Part shown: in pieces, positions 1-34,354 of the stretch
How positions within the stretch are numbered: position 1 is the stretch's first letter
Layout: each line of letters opens with the position of its first letter
From: Macrostomum lignano
Lineage: Eukaryota
Assembly (NCBI GenBank): GCA_002269645.1
Contig: NIVC01001706.1
Coordinates: 1-41,240 of the forward strand
DNA length: 41,240 nucleotides
Reading direction: 5' to 3'
The notes under the pieces: generated by a model
Told to the model about the DNA's origin: nothing
Seen by the model: only the letters and a program-made list of their open reading frames with translations
Databases searched by the model: none
Made by a program: the position numbers and the translations under genes

Positions 1-31
1 ATAGTTTCAGGTTCGTAAATGCCTAATGTTT

Positions 32-595
32 CTATCGGTGGAGCTTTGGTTTGTCCAAACGTAATTCTTTTAATTCCATATCGGTAAAAGTTTCAACATC
101 TAAAATTCTATTTCTATCTTTTAAATATTTTTCATATAATTCAACCGCGGTTGATAATTCATGAATCGTTATCTCTCCGTCATCCAATATTTTTTGCACA
201 TATAAATATAATTGATTTTTATATTGCTTGCAACATCTCTTAAGATTTATATTTTTCCTTTCTTTTTTAAGATATAATTTAATTGCTAAAAGTATTGATA
301 AGTTCCTGATCAATTCAAAACCTGATATTGAGCCAATTGAAATACCTAAAAATAATTGAGATAAATTAAGAGTTGGAATAGATTGTAAAATACCTAAAAC
401 GATTACACATAACATTGATAAGCTTCCAAATCCAATATTGAAAAAGTCCATATTTCTTATATGGTTTGAAACTCTTCTTACTTTTTTAGCATATAAATCA
501 TAATCATAATTTATTCGATCAACATTACTTAACATCTGACCTTTACGTTGGTTGAACCGGTCGCGTTCCCATTTATCTGCTTCAGATACCGACAT
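32..595 (-). CDS. Viral hypothetical membrane protein (187 aa, two hydrophobic helices)
   Basis: Intact ORF; hydrophobic segments FFNIGFGSLSMLCVIVLGIL and LFLGISIGSISGFELI; co-oriented with the structural module. Confidence 0.6.
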   Translation of the reverse strand: MSVSEADKWERDRFNQRKGQMLSNVDRINYDYDLYAKKVRRVSNHIRNMDFFNIGFGSLSMLCVIVLGILQSIPTLNLSQLFLGISIGSISGFELIRNLSILLAIKLYLKKERKNINLKRCCKQYKNQLYLYVQKILDDGEITIHELSTAVELYEKYLKDRNRILDVETFTDMELKELRLDKPKLHR

Positions 596-657
596 TCTCG
601 TCTATTTTTAATAGCACCAAAATGAATTCCCGCGCTCTTTGGGGATTTGTCCCGAGC

Positions 658-906
658 TCAATAGGTATTGTATTGGAGTTTTCTTTCTTTTTTCTCCCAT
701 TTAAATCCTATTTTCCAAAACTCTTGAAGTATAATATGATTTTTTAATAACTTAATTAATTCTTGAAGCTTCTTATTATCCTGAACATTTACAGTACTAA
801 ATAAAAATTTGGTATGAGATTTGAATGTTTTTATATTTGATTCTTGTTTAGGAATAGGAATAATAACATTATTTTGCCGCATCGATGGAGTTCTACTAAA
901 AGCCAT
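658..906 (-). CDS. Small viral hypothetical protein (82 aa, MAFSRTP...)
   Basis: ATG at 906 has the AAAAATGG context used by other viral genes and lies 31 nt after the fibre stop; no recognisable motif. Confidence 0.4.
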   Translation of the reverse strand: MAFSRTPSMRQNNVIIPIPKQESNIKTFKSHTKFLFSTVNVQDNKKLQELIKLLKNHIILQEFWKIGFKWEKKERKLQYNTY

Positions 907-937
907 TTTATATAGAAATATTTTATATATAAATATT

Positions 938-2979
938 TTATATTTGAGTAGGAGGTTTTTCCAAATAAGCAGTAGAGGGAAAAACATAACCAAACGACGT
1001 ACTACCACATACAACTGCACCACGAATAAAATGTGCAGCATCCGCTCCACCAGTTCGAGCACCAAAACCCATAAGGGTTCCAGATTTATCTAAAGTTCCC
1101 CAAGTTCCACTATCATATGTGAAAACGTTCTGTCCAATGAGGGTAAAAGAATCACCAGCAACATTGTATGACTGTAATCGGTACCAAACCCTTTGATTTA
1201 AAATATTAACTTCAAATAAATGCCAATGCCGTTATCAATATTAGCATAGGCTACAGTTTGATCTGCGCCAGTATTAACATCCGCGCGGCTTGATCCGTCT
1301 GATTTTTTATTACTCCAAACAACTCCAAACCTATCAGTCCACTCACTAGCAAACACTATCAGCCCGGCGTCGGTTGATAATCCAGTTCCAAATTCCGATG
1401 TTGGACGTTGGTGACAGTATGCATAAAACCAAACCGCATCTGCACCATCTCCTGTAGAATTAGCAACTCGGAAAAAGAAAGACGCAGATATATTTTGAAA
1501 ATGTGTGAAATTGAATTGTAAAGCACCACTTACTCCAGAAGTTTCACGAGTAATTCTAGCGCCGTTTTGATAATCGATATAAGAAGCATCGCTAATTAAA
1601 GAACCGACTGGATATATATCTCCGGCGGTTGTTGGATTTTGATATCCAGACCAATTGCAAATTACTGGTTCGAACAAGGCCGCATCAATAGCAGGTATTC
1701 CATCCAATTTATTTTTATCGCTTCCAGACATTCTACCATTTGATGTTGGAGTAGCTAGCTGATCTACGTACGCTCGCGGAACTGCAGAAAGTATTTGAGT
1801 TGGCCAATTAAGATCTTGAATTTCAACACGGTGTTCAAATAATTGTATTTGACGAACCTCGATAGGTTGTGTACCGGTACCACCAGTTGGGAAGAATACG
1901 CTATAATATTTCCAAAAATTAGTCGTTAAATTAGATAGAGCAAATGATGTTGCTTGAACTGGTGATCCCGACGTAGTTAATGTTGTCCATGAATCGGTAG
2001 CAACATTTTTTGCGCGAACCGACCACCCGAGGGTATCTCAATTGTTTCACTGCCTGTAATTCTTAATTCAAATATTCTTCTATTATAACCTAAAAATTCA
2101 AATTGAATTTCCATATTGGTTGTGGTTCCGGTATTTGGTGACCATTGTGTCGCAAGGCTTCCATCTCCAACTCGAAAAGCTGTGTTGCCATTTTCAGATG
2201 CTGTAAGAACAACATCAGGATTTGAAGTATTTGATGTAAGCGGCGTGGTAAAAATATCGGCGTCGGTTGCATTAGCTCGCTCATTTACTTGGCCTAGAGT
2301 TATCGAGTCTGCGTTCTCTGTTCCAAATAATAAATTTGTTAATTTAAAATTATTCATATTAATATTTCCACTACGAGTGGCAACTTGATTATCGACATAG
2401 TTCTTATCAACCACTGAATCACTAGTTGTAATTGAAACATTTATAATTCGGTTGTTGCTCATATCTAGGTTTCCGGTTGCGGTGGTTTGAACATAACGTG
2501 AATCAGAATCAGTTCGAGAATAAGAATCAGTTACATCTCTTTTTAAATTTAATCCATTATCAACTTCGGTTTTGGTATAAGAATCGGCTACGTTCCGTTT
2601 CAAATTTAATGAATTATCAACTTCGGTTTTGGTATAAGAATCGGCTGTATTGCGTTTTAAATTTAATGAATTATCAACTTCGGTTTTGGTATAGAATCGG
2701 CTGTATTGCGTTTTAAATTTAATGAATTATCAACTTCGGTTTTGGTATAGGAATCGGCTACGTTCCGTTTCAGATTTAGTGAATCATCTATTTGAGTTTT
2801 AGTATAGGAATCTGCAACATTTCTTTTTAAATTTAGTTTAGTATCAACTTCACTTTTTTTATAACCTTCATCTCATTAATATATCGATTATCTCCAAATG
2901 TAACACTTATTCCACCAGATGTGCCACCACCACCACTACTTGTTGTTCCGTTCCATGAGGGTGTTCCAGAAAATAACAT
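938..2979 (-). CDS. Fibre/adhesin-like protein (~680 aa reconstructed): Gly-rich start, YTKxEVD repeats, F5/8C (discoidin)-like domain, C-terminal L-type lectin domain; 4 apparent 1-bp deletions
   Basis: Reading through frameshifts at ~2872, ~2693, ~2012 and ~1230 joins ORFs 1977-2603 and 1198-1731 into one frame. Motifs: NNRIINV..DKNYVD, ASENGNTAFRVGDGSLATQW..DSWTTL..WKYYSV..EVRQIQLF, ATPTSNGRMSGSDKNKLDGI, GADAVWFY..HWHLFEV..GFGARTGGADAAHFI. Confidence 0.75.
2523..2863 (-). repeat. Coding tandem repeat, 6 x 57 bp (YTKTEVDNSLNLKRNVADS)
   Basis: Directly visible units; the span of 341 equals 6x57 minus one base. Confidence 0.9.
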
Positions 2980-3041
2980 TTTTTACTGTCTATTTTATAG
3001 AGTCTAAAATCGCGTAGTCGCGGACTCCGTCCGATCGAACC

Positions 3042-3479
3042 TTAGTTCGCATGCTTTGCATGATATCTTAAATACTTCGGGGTTTCCTTCGAGTTATTAA
3101 TTTTATATAAAAAATACAACGCCGCTTGCCCGCAATAACTTTTATCAAAGGTTTGAAATTGTTCGTGATGATCTCCACATAAACGATTTTTAGTATGATT
3201 AAATTTATCTTTTATTTCCTGTAACGGAGGAAGCGCGTATGAATCAAAAAAATAAACAAGTTTTGGTTTTGAATAAACTGCTGACCAATGAACACCATTT
3301 TCTTTTGTTGTTTCAATATTAACAATGAAAGATCCATATTGTGGTAAGTCTTTGATCTCATCTCGCATAACACATCTGAATGGTTTTATTTTTAACTGCC
3401 TCGCCCAATTTGTTAATTCGATATTGCTTGTTGTGTCCGTTCCATATCTTTGTTTAAAATCATCCCACGTCATGGTCAT
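3042..3479 (-). CDS. Adenain-like cysteine (maturation) protease
   Basis: GVHW (His), FFDSY (Asp) and QTFDKSYCG (Gln, Cys) motifs in the order seen in adenoviral and Polinton proteases. Confidence 0.9.
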   Translation of the reverse strand: MTMTWDDFKQRYGTDTTSNIELTNWARQLKIKPFRCVMRDEIKDLPQYGSFIVNIETTKENGVHWSAVYSKPKLVYFFDSYALPPLQEIKDKFNHTKNRLCGDHHEQFQTFDKSYCGQAALYFLYKINNSKETPKYLRYHAKHAN

Positions 3480-3480
3480 T

Positions 3481-3690
3481 TTATGTTCCTGAAAAACTCT
3501 TGGTTTTAGTTAGTTTCGTAGGTGTGGGTTTTAACAATTCCTTTCTTATTTTATCAGCTTGTAACTGCCTTAATTTTGCTAGTTCTAGTTCGTAATTATC
3601 TTCAGCTTTTTTAACTTTTTCTGATTGTTTTTTTATTAAATTATTATTATTATCGTGCTTTGCACGCGAACATGTTGTTCGATTACCCAT
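3481..3690 (-). CDS. Small basic, coiled-coil-like viral hypothetical protein (69 aa)
   Basis: AAAAATG start; tightly packed between the minor capsid and protease genes. Confidence 0.45.
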   Translation of the reverse strand: MGNRTTCSRAKHDNNNNLIKKQSEKVKKAEDNYELELAKLRQLQADKIRKELLKPTPTKLTKTKSFSGT

Positions 3691-3700
3691 TTTTACAGTA

Positions 3701-4484
3701 CTAAACCTGTTTTATACGTAAAATTATTGTTATTGACTGCCCACCAAAACTTATTAATCTATCGCTTTCATCTACAATCCTAATATAAATTGATTGAACA
3801 TATATTGATTTAATGGTAATATATTGGGGTTTGGGGTGCAACAATCATTTTCTCTCCAATTGGAACAGCAAGAAATGGGATTGAATAAATAATTCCACGT
3901 TGAACCAAAACTCCGTTATCGTCTGTTATATAACCACCGTTTGAAATGTCGGTTGTTATATTAATTGTATTTACTCCACCCTCTATATTTCCAACTGTAT
4001 CACCGGTGCTTGATGTGGTAACTATTCGGGAATTAAATCCAAGTATGGTTCTGAGTGAATTTGCAATTGTGAAATCAACCTGATATCCGGATCCTAGTGA
4101 TAGTGTGAATCTGCCAGACGGTAAATCAACACCTATAACAATTGCTCCTGCTACCCAATCACCATTAGTTGTTAATTCTCCTTCTATATAAGCATTCAAA
4201 TCAGTATAGCTATACGCTCCTGGGTTAACGCTAAATGTTGTCCAATTGGCTCCGGAATCTTTAGAATATCTAAATTGATTATTTGTTGCATTAATTAATT
4301 GAGGCATGTTGAAAACCGAAAATAGTATTAAACCTATTTGATAACTTAGGCTTTGATCAAGTTGTAATGGATCGCGCAATTGAATCCGTTGCTCGCTGGT
4401 TGTCATTATAAACTGTAATGTTGTACTAAATTTTGAATTAGTTCGATCTACCAATTGTTTTATAGTATTTAAATTTGTAGTCAT
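3701..4484 (-). CDS. Minor capsid protein (penton, single jelly roll); frameshift(s) near 3790-3815
   Basis: Motifs NNQFRY, PGAYSYTDLNAYI, LGF, NTINITTDISNGGY, GEKMIVAP..IY. The shifted frame continues YIRIVDESDRLISFGGQSITIILRIKQV to TAG at 3701, the typical Polinton mCP C-terminus. Confidence 0.8.
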
Positions 4485-4501
4485 TTTTATAGTGGGAAAT
4501 T

Positions 4502-4625
4502 AATCGGACGAAGTCCGCGTTCCGAAGGAACGATCGAACGAAGTTCGCGACCCTATGGGGCGATCGTACCGAAGGTACGCGTGCTATGCACGATCGAACG
4601 AAGTTCGCGACCCTATGGGGCGATC
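4502..4625. repeat. Array of four 30-bp units, each CGATCG-hairpin-CGCG-hairpin (8 mini-hairpins)
   Basis: GAC-GAA-GTC, TTCC-GAA-GGAA, AAC-GAA-GTT, CCC-TAT-GGG, TACC-GAA-GGTA, TGC-TAT-GCA, AAC-GAA-GTT, CCC-TAT-GGG, with CGATC at 4531, 4561, 4591 and 4621. Confidence 0.9.
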
Positions 4626-5413
4626 CTCTTCTTCCTCATTATCTTCTTTTATCAAATTTGTTAAAATTCTATGTTTCCTTTCTAACCTCGGATTGATATA
4701 AATATGTTTGTATTGGCTATCATCCCAAATTTTTTTACACATACTTTTAAATGGTTTTGCATCCAATCCGGGATTAAATCTAGCGTGAATATTTTGTAGA
4801 TCATAGTTATCTAAATCAAACATTACACAACAGCTAGCATTCTTTTTTATAATCGATTCTAATTCTCTAAAGGATTGAGTAAGATAAAAAGCTCCAATTC
4901 CATCTCCTCTACCACTAACAAAAATTTCCTTTTGCAATTCTTGATCACCGTCATTAATACAATCATCAAAATAATTAGTGTTTTATCATGTTTTGGAATT
5001 TGATCATAGGCTAATCGGGTTGATACTCTAACAGTTGGGGCTCGATCGGACGAAGTCCGCGACCCTTCGGGGCGATCGGTGATGTTTTCTGGCTGTTGTG
5101 CCATTGTTTTACATAAATCCTCAATGTCTGCTAGATTAAATCGCGGTTCGTCATCATCCTCATATTGCTCATATGCTCTTAACATTCTAAACAAGACATC
5201 TTTTTTTAATTTGTTTTTTAATCCATGTTTAAGAAATTCATAATATTTTATTCTAGGTTTGTTAGTATAAATTATTAAATTATTATAGTCTAGCATTCCA
5301 TCGGTTGTTAACAGGTCATAAACAAAGTGTGTTTTTCCTTTACCTGATCCTCCGATTACTAAACAAAGAAAAGGATCATTTGGAAATATTTTATTGTGTT
5401 TTGCCTTTACCAT
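4584..5413 (-). CDS. A32/FtsK-like genome packaging ATPase; one 1-bp deletion at ~4968-4971
   Basis: Walker A GGSGKGKT. Restoring one T gives Walker B LIIFDD, followed by SGRG, YLTQSF and IIKKN, which joins ORFs 4859-5413 and 4584-4937. Confidence 0.9.
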
Positions 5414-5497
5414 TTTTAAAGAAATAATTTAAATAGGCGCGACGGTCGGAGACCTGCGACACTAAAGTGGTGCGACGTGCTTTGCACTGCACTCATT

Positions 5498-6970
5498 TTA
5501 CAATGGTGCGTCCCGAACAATCGTGCCATCAGCTTTAGCAATTGACATATATTCCTCTAGAAACAATACGTGTGCGTCAAGTGCCTGATTACCAGTTTTA
5601 TTAATCTCTAACATATAATTAAGTCCAATATTGGCTACGTTTTCTTTCTGTGCCGTTAGATCATAAACAACCACTGGATGAATGTTTAGAAACTCTGTGG
5701 GTGTGTACTGAGGGACGGCATATGCTTCATTTTTGGCATAATCTTGATAATATTTTATAAAATCATTAACATTATTATTTGCTATATTTAAATTTAGGGG
5801 GTCTTTAACCGGATAATATTGATCATCAACCTGCAGGCGGATATTCTGAACATTAAACTCGTTAATAGCTGCAGCCGCATTGTCTGTTGCGGTGGCTGCT
5901 TGTTCTGCTATGGCACCGGATTGAAGCCAATATAAATCCCCATTTGCTCTTTTACTCCTTCTATTTGTTATCTTAAACCAAACAAAAATATATCTCACCC
6001 GACGTTTTGATGTCAGTATTTGCCACTGGAATGAATCCTGGTTATTATTAATGGTTCGCATAAAATGTCGACGATTCAAATAAAATATTTCCTGATCATG
6101 CGTTAACTGATTATCGATGTGTTTTAAAAGTGGGGCTGTTACCTCAATAGTTGGTACGACTAATTGAATTGAATCTATACGAACTGCTATATCGGTTGAA
6201 ATTGAGGTTCCATAAAGTATCCTAGGCTGATATCCACCAGATATTTGCAACTGTATCCCAAATTTTAATCCTTTCCATACCCGATTTGGTGAGAAAAACC
6301 CAAATAGTGGAAAGATTGAAAAGTCCTGCTCATATGCTGTTGCTGTGGTTAAAACCGCGACTGGGAATTTATTCTGACGATCTATAAAACCAGTATTAAT
6401 ATCTTTTGTATTAGTCATAGTGGTTACAACTGGAACTATGTTTGTATTAAGGTAAACAATTAGCGCTGCAGTATCTGCACCGGCTGCGTTTTGTACATTA
6501 GGGAAAACTACTGCTTGACCGTTACCTTTATCCGGCATCCACCCAACATTATCACCAACTTGTTTTGATAAATAAGTATAATTTAAATGTTTCAAAACTC
6601 CATTAATCTCTGCGGGGTTTGATGATGTCTCAACCTCAGCACCATTAACAGTTAGTTGAGCTTGGGAAAAACATTTATAAAACCAATCATTTTCTATTAT
6701 TATTCCGGATCGATCTGCGATATCTCCGGCTGCAAGAGCAGTTCCATCATTTCTAGTATACAACCATCTAACGCGGAAAAACGCATTTTTCATATCCAAT
6801 ATAGTGTTGGTTGCGCCGATGTCAAAAGTTACCGTTCCAGTAGTAAAGTTATTTGAATTATCACTTGTTGGTAGGGTATAATTTAAATCTCTTGCTCTGA
6901 CCTCATTAATATACTGTCGGTGCTTTTTGAAATGAAATTTATCACTCCACATAGTTTTTGTTTCAGCCAT
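5498..6970 (-). CDS. Major capsid protein (double jelly roll, Polinton type), 490 aa, intact
   Basis: Size, beta-rich composition, N-terminal VTFDI..TILDMKNAFFRV and CFSQAQLTVNGAEVE, C-terminal NIRLQVDDQYYP and PVVVYDLT; adjacent to ATPase and mCP. Confidence 0.85.
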   Translation of the reverse strand: MAETKTMWSDKFHFKKHRQYINEVRARDLNYTLPTSDNSNNFTTGTVTFDIGATNTILDMKNAFFRVRWLYTRNDGTALAAGDIADRSGIIIENDWFYKCFSQAQLTVNGAEVETSSNPAEINGVLKHLNYTYLSKQVGDNVGWMPDKGNGQAVVFPNVQNAAGADTAALIVYLNTNIVPVVTTMTNTKDINTGFIDRQNKFPVAVLTTATAYEQDFSIFPLFGFFSPNRVWKGLKFGIQLQISGGYQPRILYGTSISTDIAVRIDSIQLVVPTIEVTAPLLKHIDNQLTHDQEIFYLNRRHFMRTINNNQDSFQWQILTSKRRVRYIFVWFKITNRRSKRANGDLYWLQSGAIAEQAATATDNAAAAINEFNVQNIRLQVDDQYYPVKDPLNLNIANNNVNDFIKYYQDYAKNEAYAVPQYTPTEFLNIHPVVVYDLTAQKENVANIGLNYMLEINKTGNQALDAHVLFLEEYMSIAKADGTIVRDAPL

Positions 6971-7004
6971 TTTTTTAAGTTAAAAAAGTTTTTTATGTTA
7001 AAAA

Positions 7005-7676
7005 ATGAGTCAATTTATGGACGTTGATGGAGAGTTAGCGATTTATAAAGAGAAGCAAAGATATTCTGATTTTGTTAGAAATTTACAAAAAAGAAAGTTA
7101 GGAATACAATTAGCGGGTGAAAGATTTGCTGCTCCTTTTGTTAATCCTATTACTGGGAAAATTAGTGAACTAGAAAAAACAGATAAAGATCTTCTGGAAA
7201 AAATTGCTAAAAATACTGAGCCAAAAGAGGATGAAATTTTAGATGAGCCGCCTACTTATGAGACTGATCAAGCAATATTTAGAGTTGCAGAAATTAGACG
7301 TGAAGAGATTAGGGGTGGAGTTGAACAATTTCCAAGAGATGCGCCACGTAGTATTGCTGCGACAGATTTAGGTGGTGGTAATTATCGAATTGGTAACGTT
7401 GTTAAAGATCGAAATGAACTATATAGAGAATTGGGCGGAGCATTTAATATTATTACGAACCCTAGGGTAAAATTTAACCCCGATTTATATACTAGGGATG
7501 AATTAATAAGTGCTAGAATTTTTTATGATGAGTTAGGAGGAGCTGTTAAAAATACCAGCTTGTATAAATGGATTGTTAATTCTATAAATAACAAACCAGC
7601 TGTTGGTGATGGATTTAAAACACCGCGAAAACTTGTTTTAGCTGCTGCGAAAGCTGCTGGACATACTGGAGTTTAA
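7005..7676 (+). CDS. Polinton hypothetical protein (223 aa), divergent from MCP
   Basis: Intact ORF with AAAAAATG start. The FNIITNPR..YTRDEL..IFYDELGG segment resembles, from memory, a conserved Polinton ORF found upstream of PLA2 genes. Confidence 0.65.
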   Translation: MSQFMDVDGELAIYKEKQRYSDFVRNLQKRKLGIQLAGERFAAPFVNPITGKISELEKTDKDLLEKIAKNTEPKEDEILDEPPTYETDQAIFRVAEIRREEIRGGVEQFPRDAPRSIAATDLGGGNYRIGNVVKDRNELYRELGGAFNIITNPRVKFNPDLYTRDELISARIFYDELGGAVKNTSLYKWIVNSINNKPAVGDGFKTPRKLVLAAAKAAGHTGV

Positions 7677-7703
7677 TTGATTGTTAAATTTATTTTTTAT
7701 AAC

Positions 7704-8273
7704 ATGGATGAAACAAAAATTTGTACTACGTGTAGAATTGAGAAGCCGATGACTAAAGAATTTTTTTGTTGGAGAAATGACACAAAAAAATTTAAAAATC
7801 TTTGTCGATCTTGTGAGAAAGTTAAATGCACTATGTGGAGAATAAACAATAAAGATAAATGTAATAAATATGCAAAAAATAAATATCGCACTGATGAAAA
7901 TTTCAAAAATATTAGTCTAATTAGAGCTAAAATAACTTGGGCATTGAGAACTTTTCATGACAAACATTATATCTCATATCTTGGTTGCACAAAAGAATTC
8001 TTTTTTGATTGGTTAAATTTCACAAGAAATTATTATGTTCCAAAAAATTATACTGGAAAGTTAGATATTGATCATTTCATTCCCGCTTCTTCATTTAATT
8101 ACAAAGACGATGATCAGATTAAAAAGTCTGAAAATTGGAGAAATAAAAGATACTTAACTAGCATAGATAATAACTATAAAAAAGTTAAGCAACCAACCAT
8201 TGAAGAATTTGCAAAACAATTGGTGCTTTCATGTATTTTTAAGGCTATTAAAAATGAACCAAATAGTGTTTGA
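7704..8273 (+). CDS. Free-standing HNH (His-Me finger) endonuclease with N-terminal CxxC..CxxC zinc finger
   Basis: CTTC and CRSC pairs; YLGCT..FFDWL; DIDHFIPASSF..NWRN..LTSIDN, matching the HIDHIxPxSSFD..NLQPL..EN type of viral homing nucleases. ATG at 7704; the stop overlaps the next gene's start. Confidence 0.8.
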   Translation: MDETKICTTCRIEKPMTKEFFCWRNDTKKFKNLCRSCEKVKCTMWRINNKDKCNKYAKNKYRTDENFKNISLIRAKITWALRTFHDKHYISYLGCTKEFFFDWLNFTRNYYVPKNYTGKLDIDHFIPASSFNYKDDDQIKKSENWRNKRYLTSIDNNYKKVKQPTIEEFAKQLVLSCIFKAIKNEPNSV

Positions 8274-9860
8274 AGGAGGATTTTTAGACTTACAAAAAGG
8301 ATTAACGAGCTTACCACCAATCTTTACTACTGGTAAATATACAGGGGAACTACACCTACCATCAATGAACTTCACAGGTTAACCCGTGGCCTGAGTGAGG
8401 AAGGCAATGTCCTTGCTAGTCACTATTTGTGGCGACATCTCCAAATTGCGTGAAACCCGTCATACAGCTTCAAGTACCACTTCAAGTGAGAAATCTTTTG
8501 AAGGAACAGAGGTAACTCCTCTTCCCAATCGGACTTCGTCCGCGAACCTATGGTTCGATGGTAACAAGCTTGAAGACACGGTGGCAATGCGCAGCCAAGC
8601 TCCTAAGTATTTTAAATATAAGGAGAAGGTTCAGAGAGCAGACGGAGATGGGCGGTAATTATCGCCGCTTAAGGTGTGCTCCAGCCTCATTCGAAAGATT
8701 GAGGGTAAACAGCCGGGGACTAGACTGGATTTAAGATTAAATCCTGACAATACTCCAAAATCTGATTCAATTCCAATAAATGGGATTGATTGGTTAGCAT
8801 ACTATCACGACTTAGCATATAGAGATGCTGACAAGAACCCGCCCGAGGAAGCATTAAGATTAAAACATGAAGCCGATCAAAAAATGATTCAAGGATTAGA
8901 TAACTTGCAGGGATTATCGGTAGGTCAAAAATTAACTAGGTGGATGGTTAAAAAGATCTTGCAGTCTAAAGTTAAATTTGGTTTGGGAATTAATTATAAT
9001 CAACATGGAAATAATTGTGTTGAGTGTTTACTATTAAGTGGCAGTGGGTTAAGTTATGATGAGGCAAAGATTCTTCATAAAGAATATCGAAAACCTAAAT
9101 TTTATAGAAAAATCATGAACTTCAAAAAGAATGAAATTTGGTATGCTGATTTAATGTCGATGCCGAAAGATCTGGGATATAAATATATCTTAACCATATT
9201 AGATGGTTTTACTCGATACGCGTGGGCTGTTCCTTTGAAATCCAAAAAAGGAGAGGATGTTGCTGCTGCTTTTAGAAGTCTTGGAGAAAAAAGCGAACGT
9301 TTGTGTGTTGACGAAGGAAAAGAATTTTACAATCCTCACATGTATAAATTGTATCATTTTGAAAAAGGACAAGAAAGGAAAAAGGACGCGAATGGGAGTA
9401 TATTAATAAAATTTATTCTATTTATGGAGAGAGTAAAAACGCATTAATAGAAAGATTTAATAGAACTTTAGGTAAGAAATTATGGTTTCAGTTTAGTCTT
9501 AATGCTAACCAAAAATGGGTAAAAATATTACCAGACGTAGTGAAAGATTATAACAATTCATATCATTCGGCGATAAAGATGACTCCTCAACAAGCTTATA
9601 ACAATCCTGAAAATGTTAGGGTTACTTTTGGAAAATTTGAAAAAAAGAAAACTAAAGATTTTAAAGTTGGTGATTCTGTTTATATCTATAAATGGAAAGA
9701 TAAGTTTGAAAAGGGAAGAAAAGGATATTGGAAAATAAGTGAGAAATTTACTATCAGTAAAGTTTTAAATACCAATCCTACAACCTATATAATTGCTGAT
9801 AAGGATGGTGAAGAAATATTGGGTTCTTTTTATGAGAACCAGATAATGTCTGCGAACTAA
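8254..9860 (+). CDS. Parvovirus-type phospholipase A2 (PLA2X) fused to a retroviral-like (rve) integrase; exons 8254-8379 and 8713-9860; 1-bp deletion at ~9394-9396
   Basis: Joining the exons gives ELHLPSMNFTG|PGTRLDLRL..PINGIDWLAYYHDLAY (Ca loop plus HD). The frame runs on into LHKEYRKPKFYRK..WYADL..LTILDGFTRYAWAVPLKSK..CVDEGKEF, then after the shift IERFNRTL..YNNSYHSAIKMTP..FKVGDSV..GSFYE (DDE triad). Confidence 0.87.
8380..8712 (+). ncRNA. Group I self-splicing intron, IC1-type, 333 nt, no internal homing ORF
   Basis: 5' exon ends in U and the intron ends in G. P1: CAGGU/GCCUG (8375-8379/8389-8393) with U.G at the splice site. P3: CAUCUCC/GGAGAUG (8436-8442/8644-8650). P AAAUUGCGUGAAA (8443), Q AAUGCGCAGC (8586), R GUUCAGAGAGCAGA (8629), S AAGGUGUGCUCC (8671). 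P7: G-A(bulge)-GAGCA/UGCUCC. P5abc with A-rich bulge and GAAA loop; P9 with GAAA loop. Removal restores the GPGT motif in frame. Confidence 0.93.
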
Positions 9861-9870
9861 GTTCAAACAG

Positions 9871-10095
9871 TTACTTAAGACAACATGGTAGTAAATTTTT
9901 TATTACAAACAAAAACAATATTATTACTATTATTGTTACTAATATTATTATTGACATTTGTTCAACTGTTATCAAACTTAAATTTTCATTAAGTTCATTA
10001 ATTGGAACATTTCCGATGTAGGAATAGTTTACCTTCATTTTTTTATATATATTTTTCACAATAAATGTCGTTTCTGTTATAGAATAATAGTTCAT
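9871..10095 (-). CDS. Small single-pass membrane protein (74 aa), viral hypothetical
   Basis: AAAAAATG start; strongly hydrophobic IIILVTIIVIILFLFVI followed by KNLLPCCLK. Confidence 0.4.
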   Translation of the reverse strand: MNYYSITETTFIVKNIYKKMKVNYSYIGNVPINELNENLSLITVEQMSIIILVTIIVIILFLFVIKNLLPCCLK

Positions 10096-10111
10096 TTTTT
10101 AAATATTTTTT

Positions 10112-10426
10112 TCACATAAAAATTTCACTTTCATTCTCTGATTCACTGGTTTCATATGAACTATTTGTTGATTCGGAATCTGTTGATCTAACCTCCCAAT
10201 CATCCGAATTTAAATAATCTCCAAGTTGAAATATTAACTCACCCTCTTGTTCTAAATCATACATCTCATCTAGCTCTAATGGATAAAGTTTTAGGTCGTG
10301 CTTGTCGTCATATTTTAAATAAACTTCATCAATTATTCCATTCAAAATATGTTGTTTTATTATCTCTGCATTTTTAGCAACGGTCTCAAAAGTATCACTA
10401 ACAGAAAAGGTGTAAACTCGGTTCAT
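10112..10426 (-). CDS. Acidic viral hypothetical protein (104 aa)
   Basis: AAAAAATG start, intact ORF, Ser/Glu-rich tail. Confidence 0.55.
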   Translation of the reverse strand: MNRVYTFSVSDTFETVAKNAEIIKQHILNGIIDEVYLKYDDKHDLKLYPLELDEMYDLEQEGELIFQLGDYLNSDDWEVRSTDSESTNSSYETSESENESEIFM

Positions 10427-10516
10427 TTTTTATAACAGAAAAAGACCCTTCGCGCCTGCGGCGCGTGCGACGGGTTCTAGAAAGTTTGTGTGTGTTGGAG
10501 AGAGTTGGAAGCGTTG

Positions 10517-10764
10517 ACGATACAAAATACCCAGCAAACCAAAGCGAGCGACGAGGGCGTGTTCTCACCATTCAAAAAGAATTAATCGTTGTAAGTGTGA
10601 AATGGCCTGTTTGACCGAAATGAAGCGAGGATGAGCGAAGCGAGTTGAGCGAAGTGAAGACGAGCGAAAATGAAGGGAAACAGGCCATTTCACACTGATA
10701 AAGGGTTAAATTGTTTGCAATGGTGAGAATGGTTTGCTGGGTATTTTGTATCGTATATACTACT
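10517..10764. repeat. Terminal region of the Polinton: nested imperfect palindrome plus ACTACT end
   Basis: Perfect inverted arms 10517-10541/10730-10754 (25 bp), 10562-10572/10719-10729 (11 bp) and 10594-10612/10678-10696 (19 bp); terminus ATATACTACT at 10755-10764. Confidence 0.85.
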
Positions 10765-22551: not shown

Positions 22552-25500
22552 TCAGCCCGTGGCAACGTGTCCAACAACCTCACTCTGAACGAAGCCACCC
22601 TGAATGTCGGATGCCGGATTGGCCAGCGAATCAGTGTCGTCTCCACCTTCAAAAGTTCGACTTCGATTAGTGACGCCCCTCTGGACGGCGCCAGGGCTTT
22701 CGTCGCTGCTAATCAAATTTCTGGTGTCCTCCGATGCCCTCCGATCAGCGTAGGGTGCATTGACGTACCCAGCCAGGGCTCCGGCGCTCAGGGCGCTGGC
22801 CATCTGTCTGACCAGAGCGCCCGCGCTGCCCACAGCTGCTGCAGACATCTGACGCGTGAACACTCCGGTTCGGGTGCCGGCTCGAGCTCGAAGGTTCCTG
22901 CCGATCTCTTCTCTGATTTCGTCTGCTTCGTCGCGAATCGGTTCCATTAGCAGGCGTTCGAGCACGTTCTCCAGGGTGATGATGCCGCGAACTTGCCCGG
23001 TTTCTGTGCTGAACACCACCGCCATGTGGCCTGCGGGTGTTCGCAGCTCATTGTGTGGTACTGCCTGTGCCAGCACTGTCACCCCACTGTCTCCCCTGTC
23101 ACTCCACTGTCACCCCACTGTCTCTCATGTCACTCCACTGTCACTCCACTGTCTCCCCACTGTCTCTCATGTCACTCCACTGTCTCCCCACTGTCTCCCC
23201 ACTGTCTCTCATGTCACTCCACTGTCACCCCACTGTCTCCCCTGTCACTCCACTGTCTCTCCTGTCACCCCACTGTCTCTCCTGTCACTCCACTAGCTGT
23301 CTCCCCTGTCACTCCACTGTCTCCCCAGTCACCCCACTGTCTCTCCACTGTCTCTCCACTGTCTCTCCTGTCACTCCACTGTCACCCCACTGTCTCCTGT
23401 CACTCCACTGTCACCCCACTGTCTCTCCTGTCACTCCACTGTCACCCCACTGTCTCCCCTGTCACTCCACTGTCACCTCACTGTCTCTCCTGTCACTCCA
23501 CTGTCACCCCACTGTCTCCCCTGTCACTCCACTGTCACCTCACTGTCTCTCCTGTCACTCCACTAGCTGTCTCTCCTGTCTCTCCTGTCACTCCATTGTC
23601 TCTCCTGTCACTCCACTAGCTGTCTCTCCTGTCTCCCCTGTCACTCCACTGTCTCCCCAGTCACCCCACTGTCTCTCCACTGTCTCTCCACTGTCTTCCC
23701 AGTCACTCCACTGTCACCCCACTGTCTCCTGTCACTCCACTGTCACCCCACTGTCTCTCCTGTCACTCCACTGTCACCCCACTGTCTCCCCTGTCACTCC
23801 ACTGTCACCTCACTGTCTCTCCTGTCACTCCACTGTCACCCCACTGTCTCCCCTGTCACTCCACTGTCACCTCACTGTCTCTCCTGTCACTCCACTAGCT
23901 GTCTCTCCTGTCTCCCCAGTCACCCCACTGTCTCCCCAGTCACCCCCACTGTCTCCCCAGTCACCCCCACTGTCTCCCCAGTCACCCCACTGTCTCCCGT
24001 CACCCCACTGTCTCCCCAGTCACCCCACTTCCCCTGCCAAGGCAAGTAAGAAGTCTCACTCTTTCCCTGTTGAAACACATTCAGCAGGTCGTACAGAGGA
24101 GTCTGGCAGGGTACATACGGCATCTCACGGAAGCACTTCTTGTCGGCAATGATTCTAGCAAAAGACACTTCAGCCTTGTTGGCGTAGATCAGCAGCATCT
24201 TAGTCAGCAGGTGGCCTCTGATATCGTTGCGATTGTCGCCGTGAAAAATCGGCACCCTGGAGTGCGCATTGGCGATGATTTTCAATCGCACAGAGTCGGT
24301 TAGGGCACTCGAATCCGACAGCATGAACACCTCATCTATCGGGTACAGGCGTCTTCGGCTGGTACGCTGGACAGCTCCAGGGCGCCTTTGATGATCGCCA
24401 CTTCGTCGAAGGTCAGGACGCTGCGCTGTGCGGCTGCAACGCCGTCCTCGATGATGTTTCTCGACGAGGCGGTGACGGCCGCCTGCGACGCCACCGCCTG
24501 CTGCGGGTCCTGGCCACTCTCGACTAGATAGTCGCCTTCTCGACGAACTCTGGGACCGTGGAATCCGACTAGAGCTTTTAGCTCTTCTTTTTTGAATACG
24601 GTCTCGTGATTGGCGCCCAGTAGCAGGTCCAGCAGCTTTGACAAAGGAAATGCGATGGGACAAAGCAGCGCCATAAAGAGGTAGACCAGGCTGCAAGGTG
24701 TGTTGTAGTGTGGAGAGCTTCAATATTGTACTGCTCAAGCCTCTAAATCAAGCCTCGAGTCTTAAAAAGTGAAATTATGAAGAGAAAATGACTTACGGCA
24801 GACAGTAGTACCCGATAGCGAGACCGAACTTGGTGCACAGCGCCTGTGGAATCACTCTGAAATATTTTTGACTACTTATTTAAGTACTCGTACCTGGAAA
24901 AAGTAACATTAAGTTTCAAGTTTTTCGAGATATAATTTATTTTATTAAAGTCCAAACTCCATCAAATTCAGCTGTTTTATTAGCGTAACGCCCCCACCCC
25001 AACTCAGCTGTTTTATTAGCGTCAACACCCCCATCCCAATTTAGTAGTTTTATTAGCGTCAACCCCACCTCTACCCAATTCAGCTGTTTTATTTGCGTCA
25101 ATACCCCACCCCAATTCAGCTGTTTTATTAGCGTCGATGCCCCCATCCCAATTTAGTTGTTTTATTAGCGTCAATACCCCACCACAACTCAGCTGTTTTA
25201 TTAGCGTCAATACCCCACCCCAACTCAGCTGTTTTATTAGCGTCAATACCCCACCCCAACTCAGCTGTTTTATTAGCGTCAATACCCCACCCCAACTCAG
25301 CTGTTTTATTAGCATCAACACCCCACCCCAATTCAGTTGTTTTATTAGCATCAACACCCTCACCCCAATTCAGTTATTTTATTAGCATCAACACCCCCAC
25401 CCCAATTCAGCAGTTTTATTAGCATCAACACCCCCACCCCAATTCAGCTGTTTTATTAGCGTCAACATCCCCATCCCAATTCAGTTGTTTTATTAGCGTC

Positions 25501-26525
25501 AAACCCACCTCCACCAAATTCAGCTGTTTTATTAGCGTCAATACCCCCCCCCCAACTCAGCTGTTTTATTAGCATCAACACCCCCACCCAAATTCAATTG
25601 TTTTATAAGCGTCAACACCTTATCTTTTACATTAGTCTATTATTGAACGAACAGCAGCAGTTCACGATGTACTTGCACTTACTCGCCAAAGAACAGCACA
25701 GCAGTGACTGACACCACAATAGCAATAATCGGATCGGATACCCGATCTAGAAATATTGGCATCGCTTCAACACAGGCCGCATTGCCAAGAAGTAGAGTCA
25801 CTAACAGCCAATGGTGTCGTTTTATTATCGGCAACAAGCGTTTCGCGTATTTTTTTACGCTTCCATTGCCCGAATCGGCGAGTACTTTTAGGCTGAGAGG
25901 GTCCAAGCTCAATAAGCCTATAGTGAGACCGCTCATTAGACCTGTGGAAATCGAAGAATCCATAGCGTAAAAATGGACACAATATCGTACTTTAGTTAGG
26001 TAAATTTTTAGTTAAAATTTTTTTTCAAAAACCAGAAAGCGACAGAACTGGATATTTTCAAGATAACACATACAGTTATTAAATCTGCAGGTCTAGCTGA
26101 CACCAACAGATATCACCTGTCTAGGTCAAGGTGCACCTTTATAAAGCTGTCAACCTGTTAGTCGAATGTGAACTATGTCTATAAAGCTCATTGATTAGAA
26201 TCTGGTTTAATTAAACCGAACCACTGAATGAAGGATCGTTCATAATGCTCGGGGAAGTTAAAACTTTGTACTTATCTTTATGACTTCATACCATCTTCCC
26301 TATCATCATAGTGTCTCCCATATCGCTGCACTGTCCAAGTTGAAAATTTATTCATCAGACAGCAGCCAGCTTACCCGCTCCAATCACTAAGCCGGTGTAA
26401 ATTCCTAAATAGATCCAGAACCAGGTGTCTTCAGGCGTCAAAATGTGATTAGCTTCGTGATACTCCGTGCCATTACACCACAGCTCGTTTGGCGCTGTCA
26501 GAGTACAATTCAACGGAATGCCCAT
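22552..26525 (-). CDS. CNNM: CNNM/DUF21-CBS metal (Mg2+) transporter family protein; exons 26525-26375, 25941-25683, 24856-24797, 24690-24060, 23030-22552; 1-bp deletion at ~24342
   Basis: Spliced reading gives AG|LMSGLTIGLLSLD..HWLLVTLLLGNAAC.EAMPIFLD..LFFGE|VIPQALC, LTFDEVAIIKGALEL..TPIDEVFML, HSRVPIF and QGKS|HMAVV..GIITLENVLE; all junctions are GT-AG with matching phases. Confidence 0.92.
23073..24030 (+). repeat. Intronic minisatellite, ~10-11-bp units CTGTCACTCCA / CTGTCACCCCA / CTGTCTCCC
   Basis: Visible tandem units filling CNNM intron 4. Confidence 0.9.
24962..25618 (+). repeat. Intronic minisatellite, ~35-bp unit AATTCAGCTGTTTTATTAGCGTCAACACCCCACCC
   Basis: Visible tandem units in CNNM intron 2. 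Confidence 0.9.
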
Positions 26526-33595: not shown

Positions 33596-34354
33596 GTCCT
33601 GGGATATTTTTTTGCATTGCACTTCATTTGAGCAGTTTTTCTATTGTCTATGTGAAGGCTTTATTTGGCCGTCTTTTTGATACTTGTAGAGTGCCAGAGA
33701 TTCTATCTAGATGCCCCCCATCGGGGGGCGAAGATTGCTAGTCCTATATACTAAAAATGGTCTGTCTGTGTCTATGTGATCGATTAGAGAAAAAATGGCT
33801 GTACCGATTTTGTTCGAACTTGCACTGTTCGATCAGAAATTTTCCCGTGACTGTACATGCATCGTGGCTAAGAAATTTCTTGATGCTAAAGGCATTAAAT
33901 ATTCGAAAAACATGCTTTTTTGCAAAGGTCAAGCAAACTTTTCGACTTGAAATGCATTGTAAGAATGCTAGAGAAAAAACTGACTGGTTGAATTCTGATT
34001 CTGAAATAGATTGCATCATAACTGAATTGTAACTCCGACTTGAATTGAAAATGCAGTGTGGAAGCGTAGCACCAGACTTGATTTAGATTGCGTAACCATA
34101 TTGTTAACTGATACTGACTGACTGAGAAACTGATTATGTCATAACTGCTTCGTGTGATTTACTCTATGCTTGGATTTTAAAGTGTTGAATTATATAAGTG
34201 CAAAATTTGATGTTATCAAAACGATGAGAGCTAGCCTAGAGGTGAACAAACTGAACTGTTAAATGCAGCGACGATGGTTCGAATTTTCATAGAGTATAAT
34301 TTTTTAATTAAAGCTTTTCAACGTCAGGAAAACTAAAAGACTTTTTAAAAAGAA

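What the first reader, a model, noticed from the sequence alone, without database searches (positions are those of the whole stretch)
8380..8712. Group I (IC1) ribozyme intron inside a Polinton gene integrated in an apparently animal nuclear genome
Seen: a complete core can be paired. P1 has the U.G splice-site pair; P3 is a perfect 7 bp; P4, P5abc (A-rich bulge, GAAA tetraloop), P6, P8, P9 and the terminal G are present. P7 shows compensatory changes from the usual GACUA/UAGUC to GAGCA/UGCUC. The intron interrupts the PLA2 Ca-loop motif FTG|PGT, a conserved site of the kind homing introns favour. Established: IC1 introns are typical of protist, algal and fungal nuclear rDNA, and in animals group I introns are known to me only from mitochondria of early-branching lineages. 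Inference: a virus has carried a self-splicing intron into a protein-coding gene in an animal nucleus. I know of no description of this in animal Polintons.
Basis: partly seen in the sequence, partly recalled or inferred. Interest (0 to 1): 0.95.

Follow-up and report, generated by a model that had tools for sequence, protein, structure and literature searches.

The report
Self-splicing intron in flatworm-integrated virus
A genuine, structurally complete group I self-splicing intron splits the phospholipase-integrase gene of a capsid-encoding virus-like element that sits next to a flatworm-type gene; this is an unusual place for such an intron, although similar introns were reported in related viruses of protists in 2025.

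Summary
Rfam's group I intron model matches 8370-8703 over its full length (64.6 bits, gathering score 50, E 2.7e-14). Bounds 8380-8712 give a 333-nt intron in which 70 of 71 proposed pairs form, including the U.G splice-site pair, P7 and the terminal G.

Aligned as separate rows, exon 1 ends and exon 2 begins at adjacent columns inside a motif that is continuous in 13 uninterrupted relatives.

The gene is a parvovirus-type PLA2-like domain fused to an rve integrase. The element also encodes a double jelly-roll capsid protein. The same contig carries a split CNNM gene most like that of the flatworm Macrostomum (82%), so the host is an animal.

New here:
- A free-standing HNH-type endonuclease gene ends 107 nt upstream of the insertion site.
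- Two diverged relatives carry a homologous intron at the same codon, while their nearest kin lack it.

Together these suggest a mobile intron, perhaps by collaborative homing.

Caveats:
- The IC1 subtype is untested, no polymerase B gene lies in the window, and TMEM94 was not found.
- Group I introns were already reported in protist polinton-like viruses with the same gene set.
- Splicing in the animal is unproven.
- DNA of relatives was not fetched, under the scan's bars.

The parts
8380..8712 (+). Group I intron, 333 nt, without an endonuclease ORF. First codon is an in-frame UAA and the last base is G8712.
   Evidence: RF00028 64.6 bits, E 2.7e-14, full model. 70 of 71 proposed pairs form. 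GC 0.477 against 0.34-0.37 in the exons.
8375..8393 (+). P1 hairpin. The last five exon-1 bases and first two intron bases pair with the internal guide sequence 8387-8393. U8379.G8389 is the wobble pair at the 5' splice site. Loop bases 8383-8386 can pair with exon 2 bases 8714-8717 (P10).
   Evidence: P1 7/7, P10 4/4; Rfam alignment.
8462..8579 (+). Peripheral domain inserted in P5. A long stem carries four hairpins: one with a GAAA loop, one short hairpin, and a GC-rich double hairpin at 8530-8557.
   Evidence: Rfam alignment shows about 110 nt inserted between the P5 strands. Local fold -38.1 kcal/mol. Double-hairpin scan.
8636..8681 (+). P7 (8636-8640/8677-8681), enclosing the P3 3' strand (8644-8650) and P8 (8652-8668). 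This is the guanosine-binding core and pseudoknot of the ribozyme.
   Evidence: Compared with the Rfam consensus, two P7 pairs are changed on both sides.
8254..8379 (+). Exon 1 of the PLA2-integrase gene, 42 codons, ending in the first half of the Ca-loop motif (..FTG).
   Evidence: Aligns with the N-termini of 13 uninterrupted relatives and ends at column 63; 72% identical to P0001.
8713..9860 (+). Exon 2 of the PLA2-integrase gene: the rest of the PLA2-like domain (PGT.., HD dyad), the rve integrase core and a C-terminal SH3/chromo-like domain. Broken by one frameshift.
   Evidence: Pfam rve E 3.5e-7 and Phospholip_A2_4 E 0.0077. 47 relatives, best 76% identity, E 1.7e-112. Starts at column 64 of A1. 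PFV integrase core E ~1e-8. Six full-length relatives each give 2 HSPs in 2 frames with 1 frame switch.
7704..8273 (+). Free-standing HNH-type (His-Me finger) endonuclease gene with two N-terminal CxxC pairs. The ORF is open from 7677. Its stop overlaps the exon 1 start by 20 nt and lies 107 nt upstream of the intron insertion site.
   Evidence: hhalign against three phage 'endonuclease VII / HNH endonuclease' proteins: probability 98.1%, 152 columns, including the CxxC pairs and the DH..P.S...N motif. tblastn hits all lie under such genes. No Pfam, NCBIfam or PDB hit by sequence and no homologue in 5.8 billion proteins.
5498..6970 (-). Major capsid protein, double jelly-roll type.
   Evidence: Foldseek: 88 viral (BFVD) and 167 PDB matches at E<=0.001, nearly all double jelly-roll capsid proteins (MELD virus, mavirus, Sputnik, PBCV-1, iridovirus, PRD1, adenovirus hexon). 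The model is only moderate (pLDDT 51). Only 3 sequence relatives.
4584..5413 (-). Packaging ATPase-like gene (Walker A motif seen by eye). Broken by at least one frameshift; carries copies of the GC-rich double-hairpin motif.
   Evidence: Two ORF pieces in different frames. Weak PHROG terminase hit, E 0.007. Double-hairpin counts. The assignment is otherwise by eye.
3042..3479 (-). Cysteine protease-like ORF (His..Asp..Cys pattern seen by eye only).
   Evidence: Translation. No family or PDB hit. Inference.
3810..4484 (-). Possible minor capsid (penton) protein, judged by position and size only.
   Evidence: Translation. No family hit. Inference.
1..10440 (.). AT-rich virus-like element (polinton-like). 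The right end is near 10,440; the left end lies beyond the window.
   Evidence: Dense ORFs. GC 0.28-0.40 against 0.45-0.58 in the flank. Sharp composition step at about 10,440.
22555..26573 (-). Host gene of the CNNM/DUF21 + CBS family: several exons separated by minisatellite-filled introns.
   Evidence: Pfam CNNM E 3.4e-14 and E 0.005; CBS weak. Best relative is Macrostomum lignano CNNM, 82% identity. Exons are colinear with that protein.

Best explanation
Positions 8380-8712 are a complete, ORF-less group I intron. It lies in the gene for a PLA2-like/rve-integrase fusion protein of a double jelly-roll-capsid virus-like element (polinton-like). That element is integrated beside a CNNM gene in the nuclear genome of a spiralian animal, most likely a macrostomid flatworm.

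How it works:
- Shown: the transcript can fold into the P1-P10 architecture. P1 presents U8379.G8389 at the 5' splice site. The P7 pocket and terminal G8712 are in place. P10 aligns exon 2.
- Inferred from the established group I mechanism: two guanosine-initiated transesterifications would remove 333 nt and join ..FTG to PGT.., restoring the Ca-loop of the phospholipase domain without gain or loss of a residue. Unspliced RNA stops at the first intron codon.

How it spreads (inferred): the intron is or was mobile. A homologous intron sits at the same codon in at least two relatives whose exons are only about 57% identical to the window's. The nearest kin of both the window and those relatives lack it. 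The adjacent free-standing HNH-type endonuclease is the likeliest mobility partner, working as in phage 'collaborative homing': the endonuclease cuts uninterrupted alleles of co-resident relatives near the insertion site, repair copies the endonuclease-plus-intron region across, and the intron protects its own allele by splitting the target.

This copy is lightly damaged (one frameshift each in the integrase part and in the ATPase gene), so it may be a recent but no longer autonomous insertion.
For: Intron identity:
- RF00028 64.6 bits against gathering score 50, E 2.7e-14, full length. Found again.
- 70 of 71 pairs form, with the U.G pair, the terminal G and a GC island.

Junction:
- the exons, as separate rows, abut at columns 63|64. 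The last exon-1 Gly, the first exon-2 Pro and the following Thr are in 13 of 13 relatives; the Gly between them is in 12 of 13.

Gene and element:
- rve core plus PF08398 PLA2-like domain. About 20 relatives have both domains.
- capsid fold.

Animal host on the same contig:
-.

Mobility:
- P0003 and P0004 begin with 13 residues matching 10 of 13 of the translated intron 3' end, then continue from the same junction.
- P0003 against uninterrupted P0005 is 73% identical, and the alignment starts at the junction residue.
- window against uninterrupted P0001 is 76% identical.

Endonuclease:
-. The precedent for collaborative homing is in PMC6083498.

Damage count:
-.
Against: - No expression or splicing data exist. 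Activity is inferred from an intact architecture only.
- No covariation test was possible, because the DNA of relatives was not fetched.
- The endonuclease call rests on one profile comparison with three phage proteins picked from weak tblastn hits (E 0.06-0.7). The ORF misses every Pfam HNH model and has no detectable homologue, so its co-occurrence with the intron in other elements is unknown.
- HNH genes also occur in polinton-like viruses with no link to introns (PMC12220804).
- Only one end of the element is in the window, so terminal repeats and a target-site duplication, the usual proof of integration, could not be checked.
- Relatives of the element's proteins come almost only from metagenome assemblies. 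The same gene set with group I introns is known from protist viruses, so the element's natural host need not be the animal.
- Two genes are frameshifted.
Confidence: 0.72

Rival explanations
1. Fossil. The intron is real but this copy is an inert relic in a dead, integrated element. It is neither transcribed nor spliced in the animal, and its intact look only reflects recent insertion.
For: One frameshift in the integrase part and at least one in the ATPase gene. The element's GC (0.34) is far from that of the host flank, suggesting a recent arrival not adapted to this genome. There are no expression data.
Against: Only two genes are damaged, each once. In AT-rich DNA such single indels can also be assembly errors. 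All core helices, the U.G pair and the terminal G are intact, and the model score is well above threshold. This rival concerns the present activity of this copy, not what the sequence is.
Confidence: 0.35
2. Chimera or contaminant. The element is a polinton-like virus of a protist (prey, symbiont or culture alga), joined to flatworm DNA by mis-assembly, so no animal nucleus is involved.
For: Relatives of its integrase and capsid proteins come almost only from metagenome assemblies. Rhodomonas lacustris C3/GKS1 viruses share the gene set and carry group I introns of the same size class (PMC12220804). There is a sharp composition step at about 10,440. Only one element end is visible.
Against: The sequence runs uninterrupted from the element into minisatellites and a colinear multi-exon animal gene, with no gap or N. 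Integrated polinton-type elements also show sharp boundaries. An rve integrase is present to explain integration.
Confidence: 0.1
3. The upstream HNH endonuclease has nothing to do with the intron (for example genome processing, packaging or inter-virus competition). The intron then persists by vertical descent with occasional loss, or moved by reverse splicing or with the help of another enzyme.
For: HNH genes in polinton-like viruses are described in other contexts. The ORF has no homologue in 5.8 billion proteins, so it is not a conserved companion of the fairly widespread PLA2-integrase family. Presence or absence of the intron can also arise by precise loss.
Against: The position is striking: the gene abuts and overlaps the start of the interrupted gene, 107 nt from the insertion site. 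This is the arrangement documented for free-standing homing endonucleases next to ORF-less introns in phages (PMC6083498, PMC2790892). The intron has no ORF of its own, yet is polymorphic in two sub-lineages.
Confidence: 0.4
4. Not an intron. The 333 nt are a chance look-alike or another insertion, and the protein truly starts inside it at the GTG of ORF 8674.
For: ORF 8674 is open through the junction, and two database proteins start the same way.
Against: E 2.7e-14 over the full-length model. The exons abut exactly within a motif that is continuous in 13 relatives. A protein starting at 8674 would lack the Ca-loop half, and P0003's leader does not align to P0005.
Confidence: 0.02

Closest known systems
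RF00028 group I introns in polinton-like viruses integrated in protist genomes (Rhodomonas lacustris cluster C3/GKS1, Paulinella micropora, Desmodesmus armatus; PMC12220804)
   Same: The virus realm and the gene set are the same (MCP, minor capsid, ATPase, cysteine protease, rve integrase). The Rfam family is the same. The intron size class is the same (309-376 bp there, 333 bp here). There the intron sits in a '~50 aa' unannotated ORF; here exon 1 is 42 codons, which a gene caller would report as a 60-aa ORF.
   Different: The hosts there are protists, while here the flanking gene is animal. That paper did not identify the interrupted gene, the exon junction or a mobility partner. I could not compare sequences, so homology of the introns is untested.
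Collaborative homing: cyanophage S-PM2 psbA group I intron with the free-standing endonuclease F-CphI (PMC6083498 and its reference 12); T4 mobE/I-TevIII trans-homing (PMC2790892)
   Same: An ORF-less group I intron sits in a conserved motif of a protein-coding gene, with a free-standing His-Me-finger endonuclease gene immediately adjacent. Uninterrupted alleles exist in relatives.
   Different: Those are bacteriophage systems with cleavage and protection shown experimentally; here nothing is shown beyond the arrangement. F-CphI has the DHDH motif flanked by Cys pairs (DHHRN family). The ORF here has DH..P.S...N with both Cys pairs far upstream, so it is HNH-like and not a DHHRN member.
Group I introns in protein-coding genes of large eukaryotic DNA viruses (chloroviruses, mimiviruses); from my own knowledge, not tested here
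   Same: A self-splicing intron in a viral protein-coding gene expressed in a eukaryotic cell.
   Different: Those are giant viruses of algae and amoebae. Here it is a small polinton-type element in an animal genome, and a different gene is interrupted.
PLA2-like genes of polintons and adintoviruses ('PLA2X'; PMC8502044, PMC3671162) and the parvovirus VP1-unique PLA2 domain (Pfam PF08398)
   Same: The same Pfam family and the same motifs (Y/F-x-G-P-G Ca-loop, HD dyad). The presumed role is membrane breach during entry.
   Different: In adintoviruses the domain is fused to a pX-like virion core domain. Here, and in about 20 metagenomic relatives, it is fused to the N-terminus of the rve integrase. 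No intron has been reported in those genes.
Group I introns of animals: mitochondrial only (sponges, cnidarians, placozoans, one annelid; PMC5360047, PMC4676843)
   Same: The ribozyme class.
   Different: Those are organellar and lie in cox1/nad5. This one is in nuclear DNA, brought in by a virus-like element.

Membership tests
Group I intron (Rfam RF00028) | Covariance-model score at or above the curated gathering score | tested here: met
   64.6 bits against 50, E 2.7e-14, model 1-253 of 253; 58.7 bits in a second scan.
Group I intron (Rfam RF00028) | P1 with a U.G wobble at the 5' splice site, formed with an internal guide sequence | tested here: met
   U8379.G8389 inside a 7/7 helix.
Group I intron (Rfam RF00028) | Conserved core P3-P4-P5-P6-P7-P8-P9 with the P3/P7 pseudoknot, and a terminal G | tested here: met
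   All helices pair (P3 7/7, P4 6/6, P5 5/5, P7 5/5, P8 5/5, P9 7/8). G8712 is the last base.
Group I intron (Rfam RF00028) | Removal restores an uninterrupted, conserved coding sequence | tested here: met
   The exons, as separate rows, abut at adjacent columns of A1 within a motif continuous in 13 relatives. The joined-exon query itself was not made.
Group I intron (Rfam RF00028) | Pair-keeping (compensatory) changes among homologous copies | not tested
   This needs the DNA of relatives, which was not fetched under the scan's bar. The only hints are two P7 pairs changed on both sides relative to the Rfam consensus and a conserved 13-residue leader in P0003 and P0004.
Group I intron (Rfam RF00028) | Guanosine-dependent self-splicing | not testable with these tools
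   No expression or biochemical data are at hand.
Subgroup IC1 | P2 and P2.1 plus a P5abc-type extension | tested here: inconclusive
   P2 (8/8) and P2.1 (5/5) can be drawn. The P5 extension is a stem with four hairpins, one with a GAAA loop. Without the double hairpin it would resemble P5abc, but this comes from one sequence and an energy-based fold.
Subgroup IC1 | Best score with a subgroup-specific covariance model | not testable with these tools
   Rfam holds a single family-level model.
Polinton/Maverick (strict sense) | Protein-primed family B DNA polymerase | tested here: inconclusive
   No ORF in 1-10,440 is long enough, and none hits a polymerase family. The element runs off the left edge, so the gene may lie outside the window.
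Polinton/Maverick (strict sense) | Retrovirus-like rve integrase | tested here: met
   Pfam rve E 3.5e-7 on the first piece. The family profile matches the PFV integrase core at E ~1e-8.
Polinton/Maverick (strict sense) | Double jelly-roll major capsid protein | tested here: met
   Foldseek E down to 1e-12 with consistent capsid hits. The caveat is a moderate model (pLDDT 51) and low TM-scores.
Polinton/Maverick (strict sense) | Packaging ATPase and adenain-like cysteine protease | tested here: inconclusive
   No significant family or PDB hit. Motifs were seen by eye only.
Polinton/Maverick (strict sense) | Terminal inverted repeats and a 6-bp target-site duplication | not testable with these tools
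   Only the right end is in the window. Fetching more of the element was left out.
Collaborative homing system | Free-standing homing-type endonuclease gene adjacent to the interrupted gene | tested here: met
   hhalign probability 98.1% to phage endonuclease VII/HNH proteins. The gene ends 107 nt before the insertion site.
Collaborative homing system | The intron lacks its own endonuclease ORF | tested here: met
   The intron is only 333 nt. Its only internal ORF is 87 codons from a GTG and runs through the paired core. It was not searched on its own.
Collaborative homing system | Uninterrupted alleles exist among relatives (targets) | tested here: met
   13 uninterrupted relatives. Intron-type leaders in P0003 and P0004. 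Mixed states occur within both sub-lineages.
Collaborative homing system | The endonuclease cuts the uninterrupted allele at or near the insertion site, and the intron protects its own allele | not testable with these tools
   No such data exist, and the test lies outside what this report may propose.
Parvovirus-type PLA2-like domain (Pfam PF08398) | Ca-loop (Y/F-x-G-x-G) and HD catalytic dyad | tested here: met
   The motif spans the junction; H and D are in 13 of 13 relatives and in the window.
Parvovirus-type PLA2-like domain (Pfam PF08398) | Pfam gathering score | tested here: inconclusive
   Exon 2 alone scores 16.9 bits against 23.9, as expected with the Ca-loop half missing. The family is precomputed for about 30 relatives. 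The joined exons were not scanned.
HNH / His-Me finger endonuclease | Match to a curated HNH model | tested here: not met
   No Pfam, NCBIfam or PADLOC-type hit for the ORF. One of the three phage comparators hits Pfam HNH only below threshold.
HNH / His-Me finger endonuclease | Conserved DH...N...N catalytic motif and a zinc-binding Cys pair, aligned to known members | tested here: met
   hhalign aligns both CxxC pairs and the DH..P.S...N stretch with the invariant columns of A3.

The most novel reading that the evidence does not exclude
A lineage of polinton-like viruses that really infects animals (here a flatworm) carries an active, mobile group I intron in its PLA2-integrase gene. The ribozyme splices out of nuclear transcripts in an animal cell and spreads among co-infecting relatives through the neighbouring free-standing HNH endonuclease. 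That would be the first functional nuclear group I intron in Metazoa and the first case of collaborative homing outside bacteriophages.
Probability: 0.2. Interest if true: 0.88.

Novelty: new member of a known kind. Interest (0 to 1): 0.62.

Why it matters
Group I introns are known in animals only from the mitochondria of a few early-branching groups and one annelid (PMC5360047, PMC4676843). A structurally intact one in nuclear DNA of a flatworm-type genome shows that virus-like elements can deliver self-splicing ribozymes into animal chromosomes.

It also explains a loose end in the 2025 report on protist polinton-like viruses, where such introns were found in an unannotated '~50 aa' ORF. Here the short ORF is exon 1 of a PLA2-integrase gene, and the junction can be placed to the base.

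The neighbouring HNH gene, together with the presence/absence pattern among relatives, makes an open question directly checkable from sequence surveys alone: do homing-type intron dynamics, well studied in phages, also operate in small eukaryotic DNA viruses?

Tried and rejected
- **Upstream ORF by sequence.** Pfam, NCBIfam, PHROGs and PDB sequence searches found nothing usable, and it has no homologue in 5.8 billion proteins. The single-sequence AlphaFold model was too poor to use (pLDDT 45). Only the profile comparison with phage proteins gave a signal.
- **Other element genes.** Protease-like and ATPase-like ORFs gave no significant family or PDB hit. Their names rest on motifs seen by eye.
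- **TMEM94.** Not found in any ORF scanned. The host gene is CNNM-type.
- **Terminal inverted repeats.** None can be defined with one end in the window.
- **Intron against phage genomes.** Only a 48-nt match of the conserved core to Brochothrix phages (E 8e-3), which is uninformative.
- **Second intron.** I considered a second intron as the cause of the split integrase or ATPase genes and rejected it: there is no further ribozyme hit, and relatives align across the integrase with a simple frame switch.
- **Double-hairpin motif as one sequence family.** Only partly upheld. Copies are 41-69% identical to the intron copy against a 99th-percentile background of 45%.
- **Left out on purpose.**
  - Any fetch of DNA of relatives or of more of this element (search for related loci, collection scans with the DNA search, the look-up of encoding contigs).
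  - The joined-exon query: the exons were searched and aligned apart, by reference.
Full report
**1. The observation**

Rfam's group I intron model (RF00028) matches window 8370-8703 on the + strand at 64.6 bits. The gathering score is 50, the E-value is 2.7e-14, and the match covers all 253 model positions. It is the only Rfam family above threshold in the 41 kb. A permissive rescan of the element finds it again and finds no second ribozyme.

- P1, 7/7, with the U8379.G8389 wobble at the 5' splice site
- P10, 4/4, between the P1 loop and the first bases of exon 2
- P2 and P2.1
- P3, a perfect 7-bp helix
- P4, P5, and P6/6a/6b
- P7, 5/5 (GAGCA/UGCUC)
- P8
- P9, with a GAAA loop
- a terminal G

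In total 70 of 71 pairs form. The intron is a GC island (0.477 against 0.34-0.37 in its exons). MFE folding alone is only modestly better than shuffles (z = -2.3).

**2. The interrupted gene**

I searched the two exons apart, by reference. I did not make the joined-exon query, as the scan's operators asked.

A search of 5.8 billion proteins gave 47 relatives, the best at 76% identity. About 20 carry both PF08398 and PF00665. So this is a family of PLA2-like/integrase fusion proteins of roughly 300-420 residues.

In alignment A1 exon 1 and exon 2 are separate rows:
- Exon 1 ends at column 63 and exon 2 begins at column 64, inside a motif that is continuous in all 13 full-length relatives.
- The last exon-1 Gly, the first exon-2 Pro and the following Thr are present in 13 of 13 relatives. 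The Gly between them is present in 12 of 13.
- The HD dyad is present in 13 of 13.

A profile of the family matches retroviral integrase cores in the PDB (E ~1e-8). Weakly (E ~0.1) but repeatedly, it also matches the N-terminal unique region of parvovirus VP1.

**3. The element**

- The 490-residue ORF at 5498-6970 (-) has only three sequence relatives.
- A moderate AlphaFold model of it (pLDDT 51) gives 88 viral and 167 PDB Foldseek matches at E<=0.001. Nearly all are double jelly-roll capsid proteins: MELD virus, mavirus, Sputnik, PBCV-1, iridovirus, PRD1 and adenovirus hexon.
- ATPase-like, protease-like and penton-like ORFs are named from motifs and position only, with no significant hits.
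- No polymerase B gene lies in the window. The element runs off the left edge, so 'Polinton' in the strict sense is unproven.
The ATPase gene is split between two frames.

**4. The host**

Most of the rest of the window is minisatellites, with two interstitial TTAGGG arrays. On the minus strand, exons of a CNNM/DUF21 + CBS gene lie between about 22.5 and 26.6 kb (Pfam E 3.4e-14 and E 0.005).

An exhaustive HMMER search with the best exon found its closest relative at 82% identity. UniRef names that protein as a CNNM protein of the flatworm Macrostomum lignano. The next named relatives are from an annelid and a snail. Two further exons are colinear with the Macrostomum protein.

The contig is therefore animal, not human, and most likely from a macrostomid flatworm. 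I found no TMEM94.

The element-host boundary near 10,440 is sharp and uninterrupted. It is followed by a roughly 240-nt foldback and then host repeats.

**5. New findings bearing on mechanism**

(a) *An endonuclease gene directly upstream.* ORF 7704-8273 ends 107 nt before the insertion site and overlaps the exon 1 start. It has no family hit and no homologue. Its weak tblastn hits in phages all lie under genes annotated 'HNH endonuclease' or 'endonuclease VII'. A profile comparison with three of these phage proteins gives 98.1% probability over 152 columns, including two CxxC pairs and the DH..P.S...N motif. So it is a free-standing His-Me-finger endonuclease.

(b) *The intron is polymorphic among relatives.* Without fetching any DNA, protein data show that relatives P0003 and P0004 begin with 13 residues that match 10 of 13 of the translated last 39 nt of this intron. 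They then continue from the very same junction. Their exons are only 56-57% identical to the window's.
- P0003 is 73% identical to the uninterrupted P0005, and that alignment starts at the junction residue.
- The window's own closest relative, P0001 (76%), is uninterrupted.

So the intron occupies the same codon in two diverged sub-lineages, and each sub-lineage also has intron-less members. That sporadic pattern is what mobile introns show.

**6. Mechanism**

- Shown: the fold, the splice-site geometry and the exact restoration of the reading frame.
- Inferred from the established chemistry of group I introns: guanosine-initiated self-splicing joins ..FTG to PGT.., and unspliced RNA terminates at the first intron codon.
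- Inferred from arrangement and distribution: mobility with the neighbouring endonuclease as partner. The documented model is cyanophage S-PM2, where the free-standing F-CphI cuts intron-less psbA alleles and the ORF-less intron protects its own allele ('collaborative homing'; PMC6083498). T4 mobE is a related case (PMC2790892).

The ORF here is HNH-like and lacks the DHDH signature of the F-CphI family. It therefore resembles that system in how it would work, not as a family member.

**7. Comparison with what is known**

- PLA2-like genes are known in polintons and adintoviruses (PMC8502044, PMC3671162).
- Full-text searches found no paper linking group I introns with adintoviruses or animal polintons.
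- However, a 2025 study reports RF00028 introns in polinton-like viruses integrated in protist genomes. These include 44 introns of 309-376 bp in Rhodomonas lacustris cluster C3/GKS1 elements, whose gene set matches this element (MCP, minor capsid, ATPase, cysteine protease, rve integrase). Those introns sit in an unannotated '~50 aa' ORF (PMC12220804), which may well be the equivalent of exon 1 here.

The combination 'polinton-like virus plus group I intron' is thus already known. New here are the animal genomic context, the identification of the gene and junction, the neighbouring endonuclease, and the polymorphism.

**8. Rivals**

- The copy may be an inert relic (two frameshifted genes, foreign composition).
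- The join to animal DNA may be an assembly artefact, with the element coming from a protist virus. The relatives are almost all metagenomic, and only one end of the element is visible.
- The HNH gene may serve another function.

None of these disputes that the sequence is a group I intron.

**10. Verdict**

This is a real, complete group I intron in a PLA2-integrase gene of a polinton-like element lying in animal nuclear DNA. It is a new member of a known kind in a surprising place, with sequence evidence for mobility. Its activity in the animal is unproven.

Noticed in passing
window 8530-8557 (intron copy) and the ATPase gene region 4490-5413: A roughly 28-nt GC-rich double-hairpin motif (5-bp stem with a 3-nt loop, then a 6-bp stem with a TAT loop) occurs five times in the AT-rich element. 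Four copies lie in or just after the ATPase gene, including a 30-nt tandem array, and one lies in the intron's peripheral P5 domain. The element has 15 GC-rich hairpins against about 1 expected from shuffles. Sequence identity between copies is only 41-69%. It may be a miniature palindromic mobile element. Without it the intron's P5 extension would look like a classical P5abc.
   Followed up: partly
window 8254-9860: The PLA2-like domain is fused to the N-terminus of the rve integrase, and about 20 metagenomic relatives share this architecture (PF08398 + PF00665). In adintoviruses the PLA2-like domain is described as fused to a pX-like virion protein instead (PMC8502044). I know of no description of a phospholipase-integrase fusion.
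   Followed up: partly
window 10517-10754: A roughly 240-nt foldback lies right at the element-host boundary: three arm segments of 24-29 nt, 76-100% complementary, around a 65-nt centre. It could be a host foldback element or a terminal structure of the element.
   Followed up: no
window 10600-41240: The host part is dominated by minisatellite arrays of 11-66-nt units (46 TRF rows in the whole window). It has two interstitial TTAGGG arrays (36540-36601 and 39613-39672). Some arrays recur in pairs (23-mer arrays at 28353-29688 and 30768-32494, and at 34351-35701 and 37435-38780). Identical 91-codon ORFs lie at 33744-34019 and 36828-37103. This indicates tandem duplication of blocks of about 3 kb, a subtelomere-like landscape.
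   Followed up: no
window 22555-26573 (-): The host gene is of the CNNM/DUF21 + CBS type, with minisatellites filling its introns.
   Followed up: yes
window 1977-2851 (-): A fibre-like gene contains 57-nt (19-codon) tandem repeats and gives weak PHROG matches to phage tail-fibre proteins (E 1.9e-6). Phage-like fibre genes are described in polinton-like viruses (PMC12220804).
   Followed up: no
window 5498-6970 (-) and 7704-8273 (+): The capsid protein has only three relatives (41-50% identity) and the endonuclease ORF has none among 5.8 billion proteins, while the integrase has 47. The lineage is very sparsely sampled.
   Followed up: no
window 8590-8637: The P4-P6 core of the intron has an 81% match over 48 nt to unannotated stretches of Brochothrix phage A9-type genomes (E 8e-3). 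These are presumably phage group I introns.
   Followed up: no
protein P0015 (relative; no DNA fetched): This 134-residue relative starts with Met directly before the junction residue. The Gly codon of an uninterrupted allele cannot supply that start, so it may be a third allele with an insert at the same codon.
   Followed up: no
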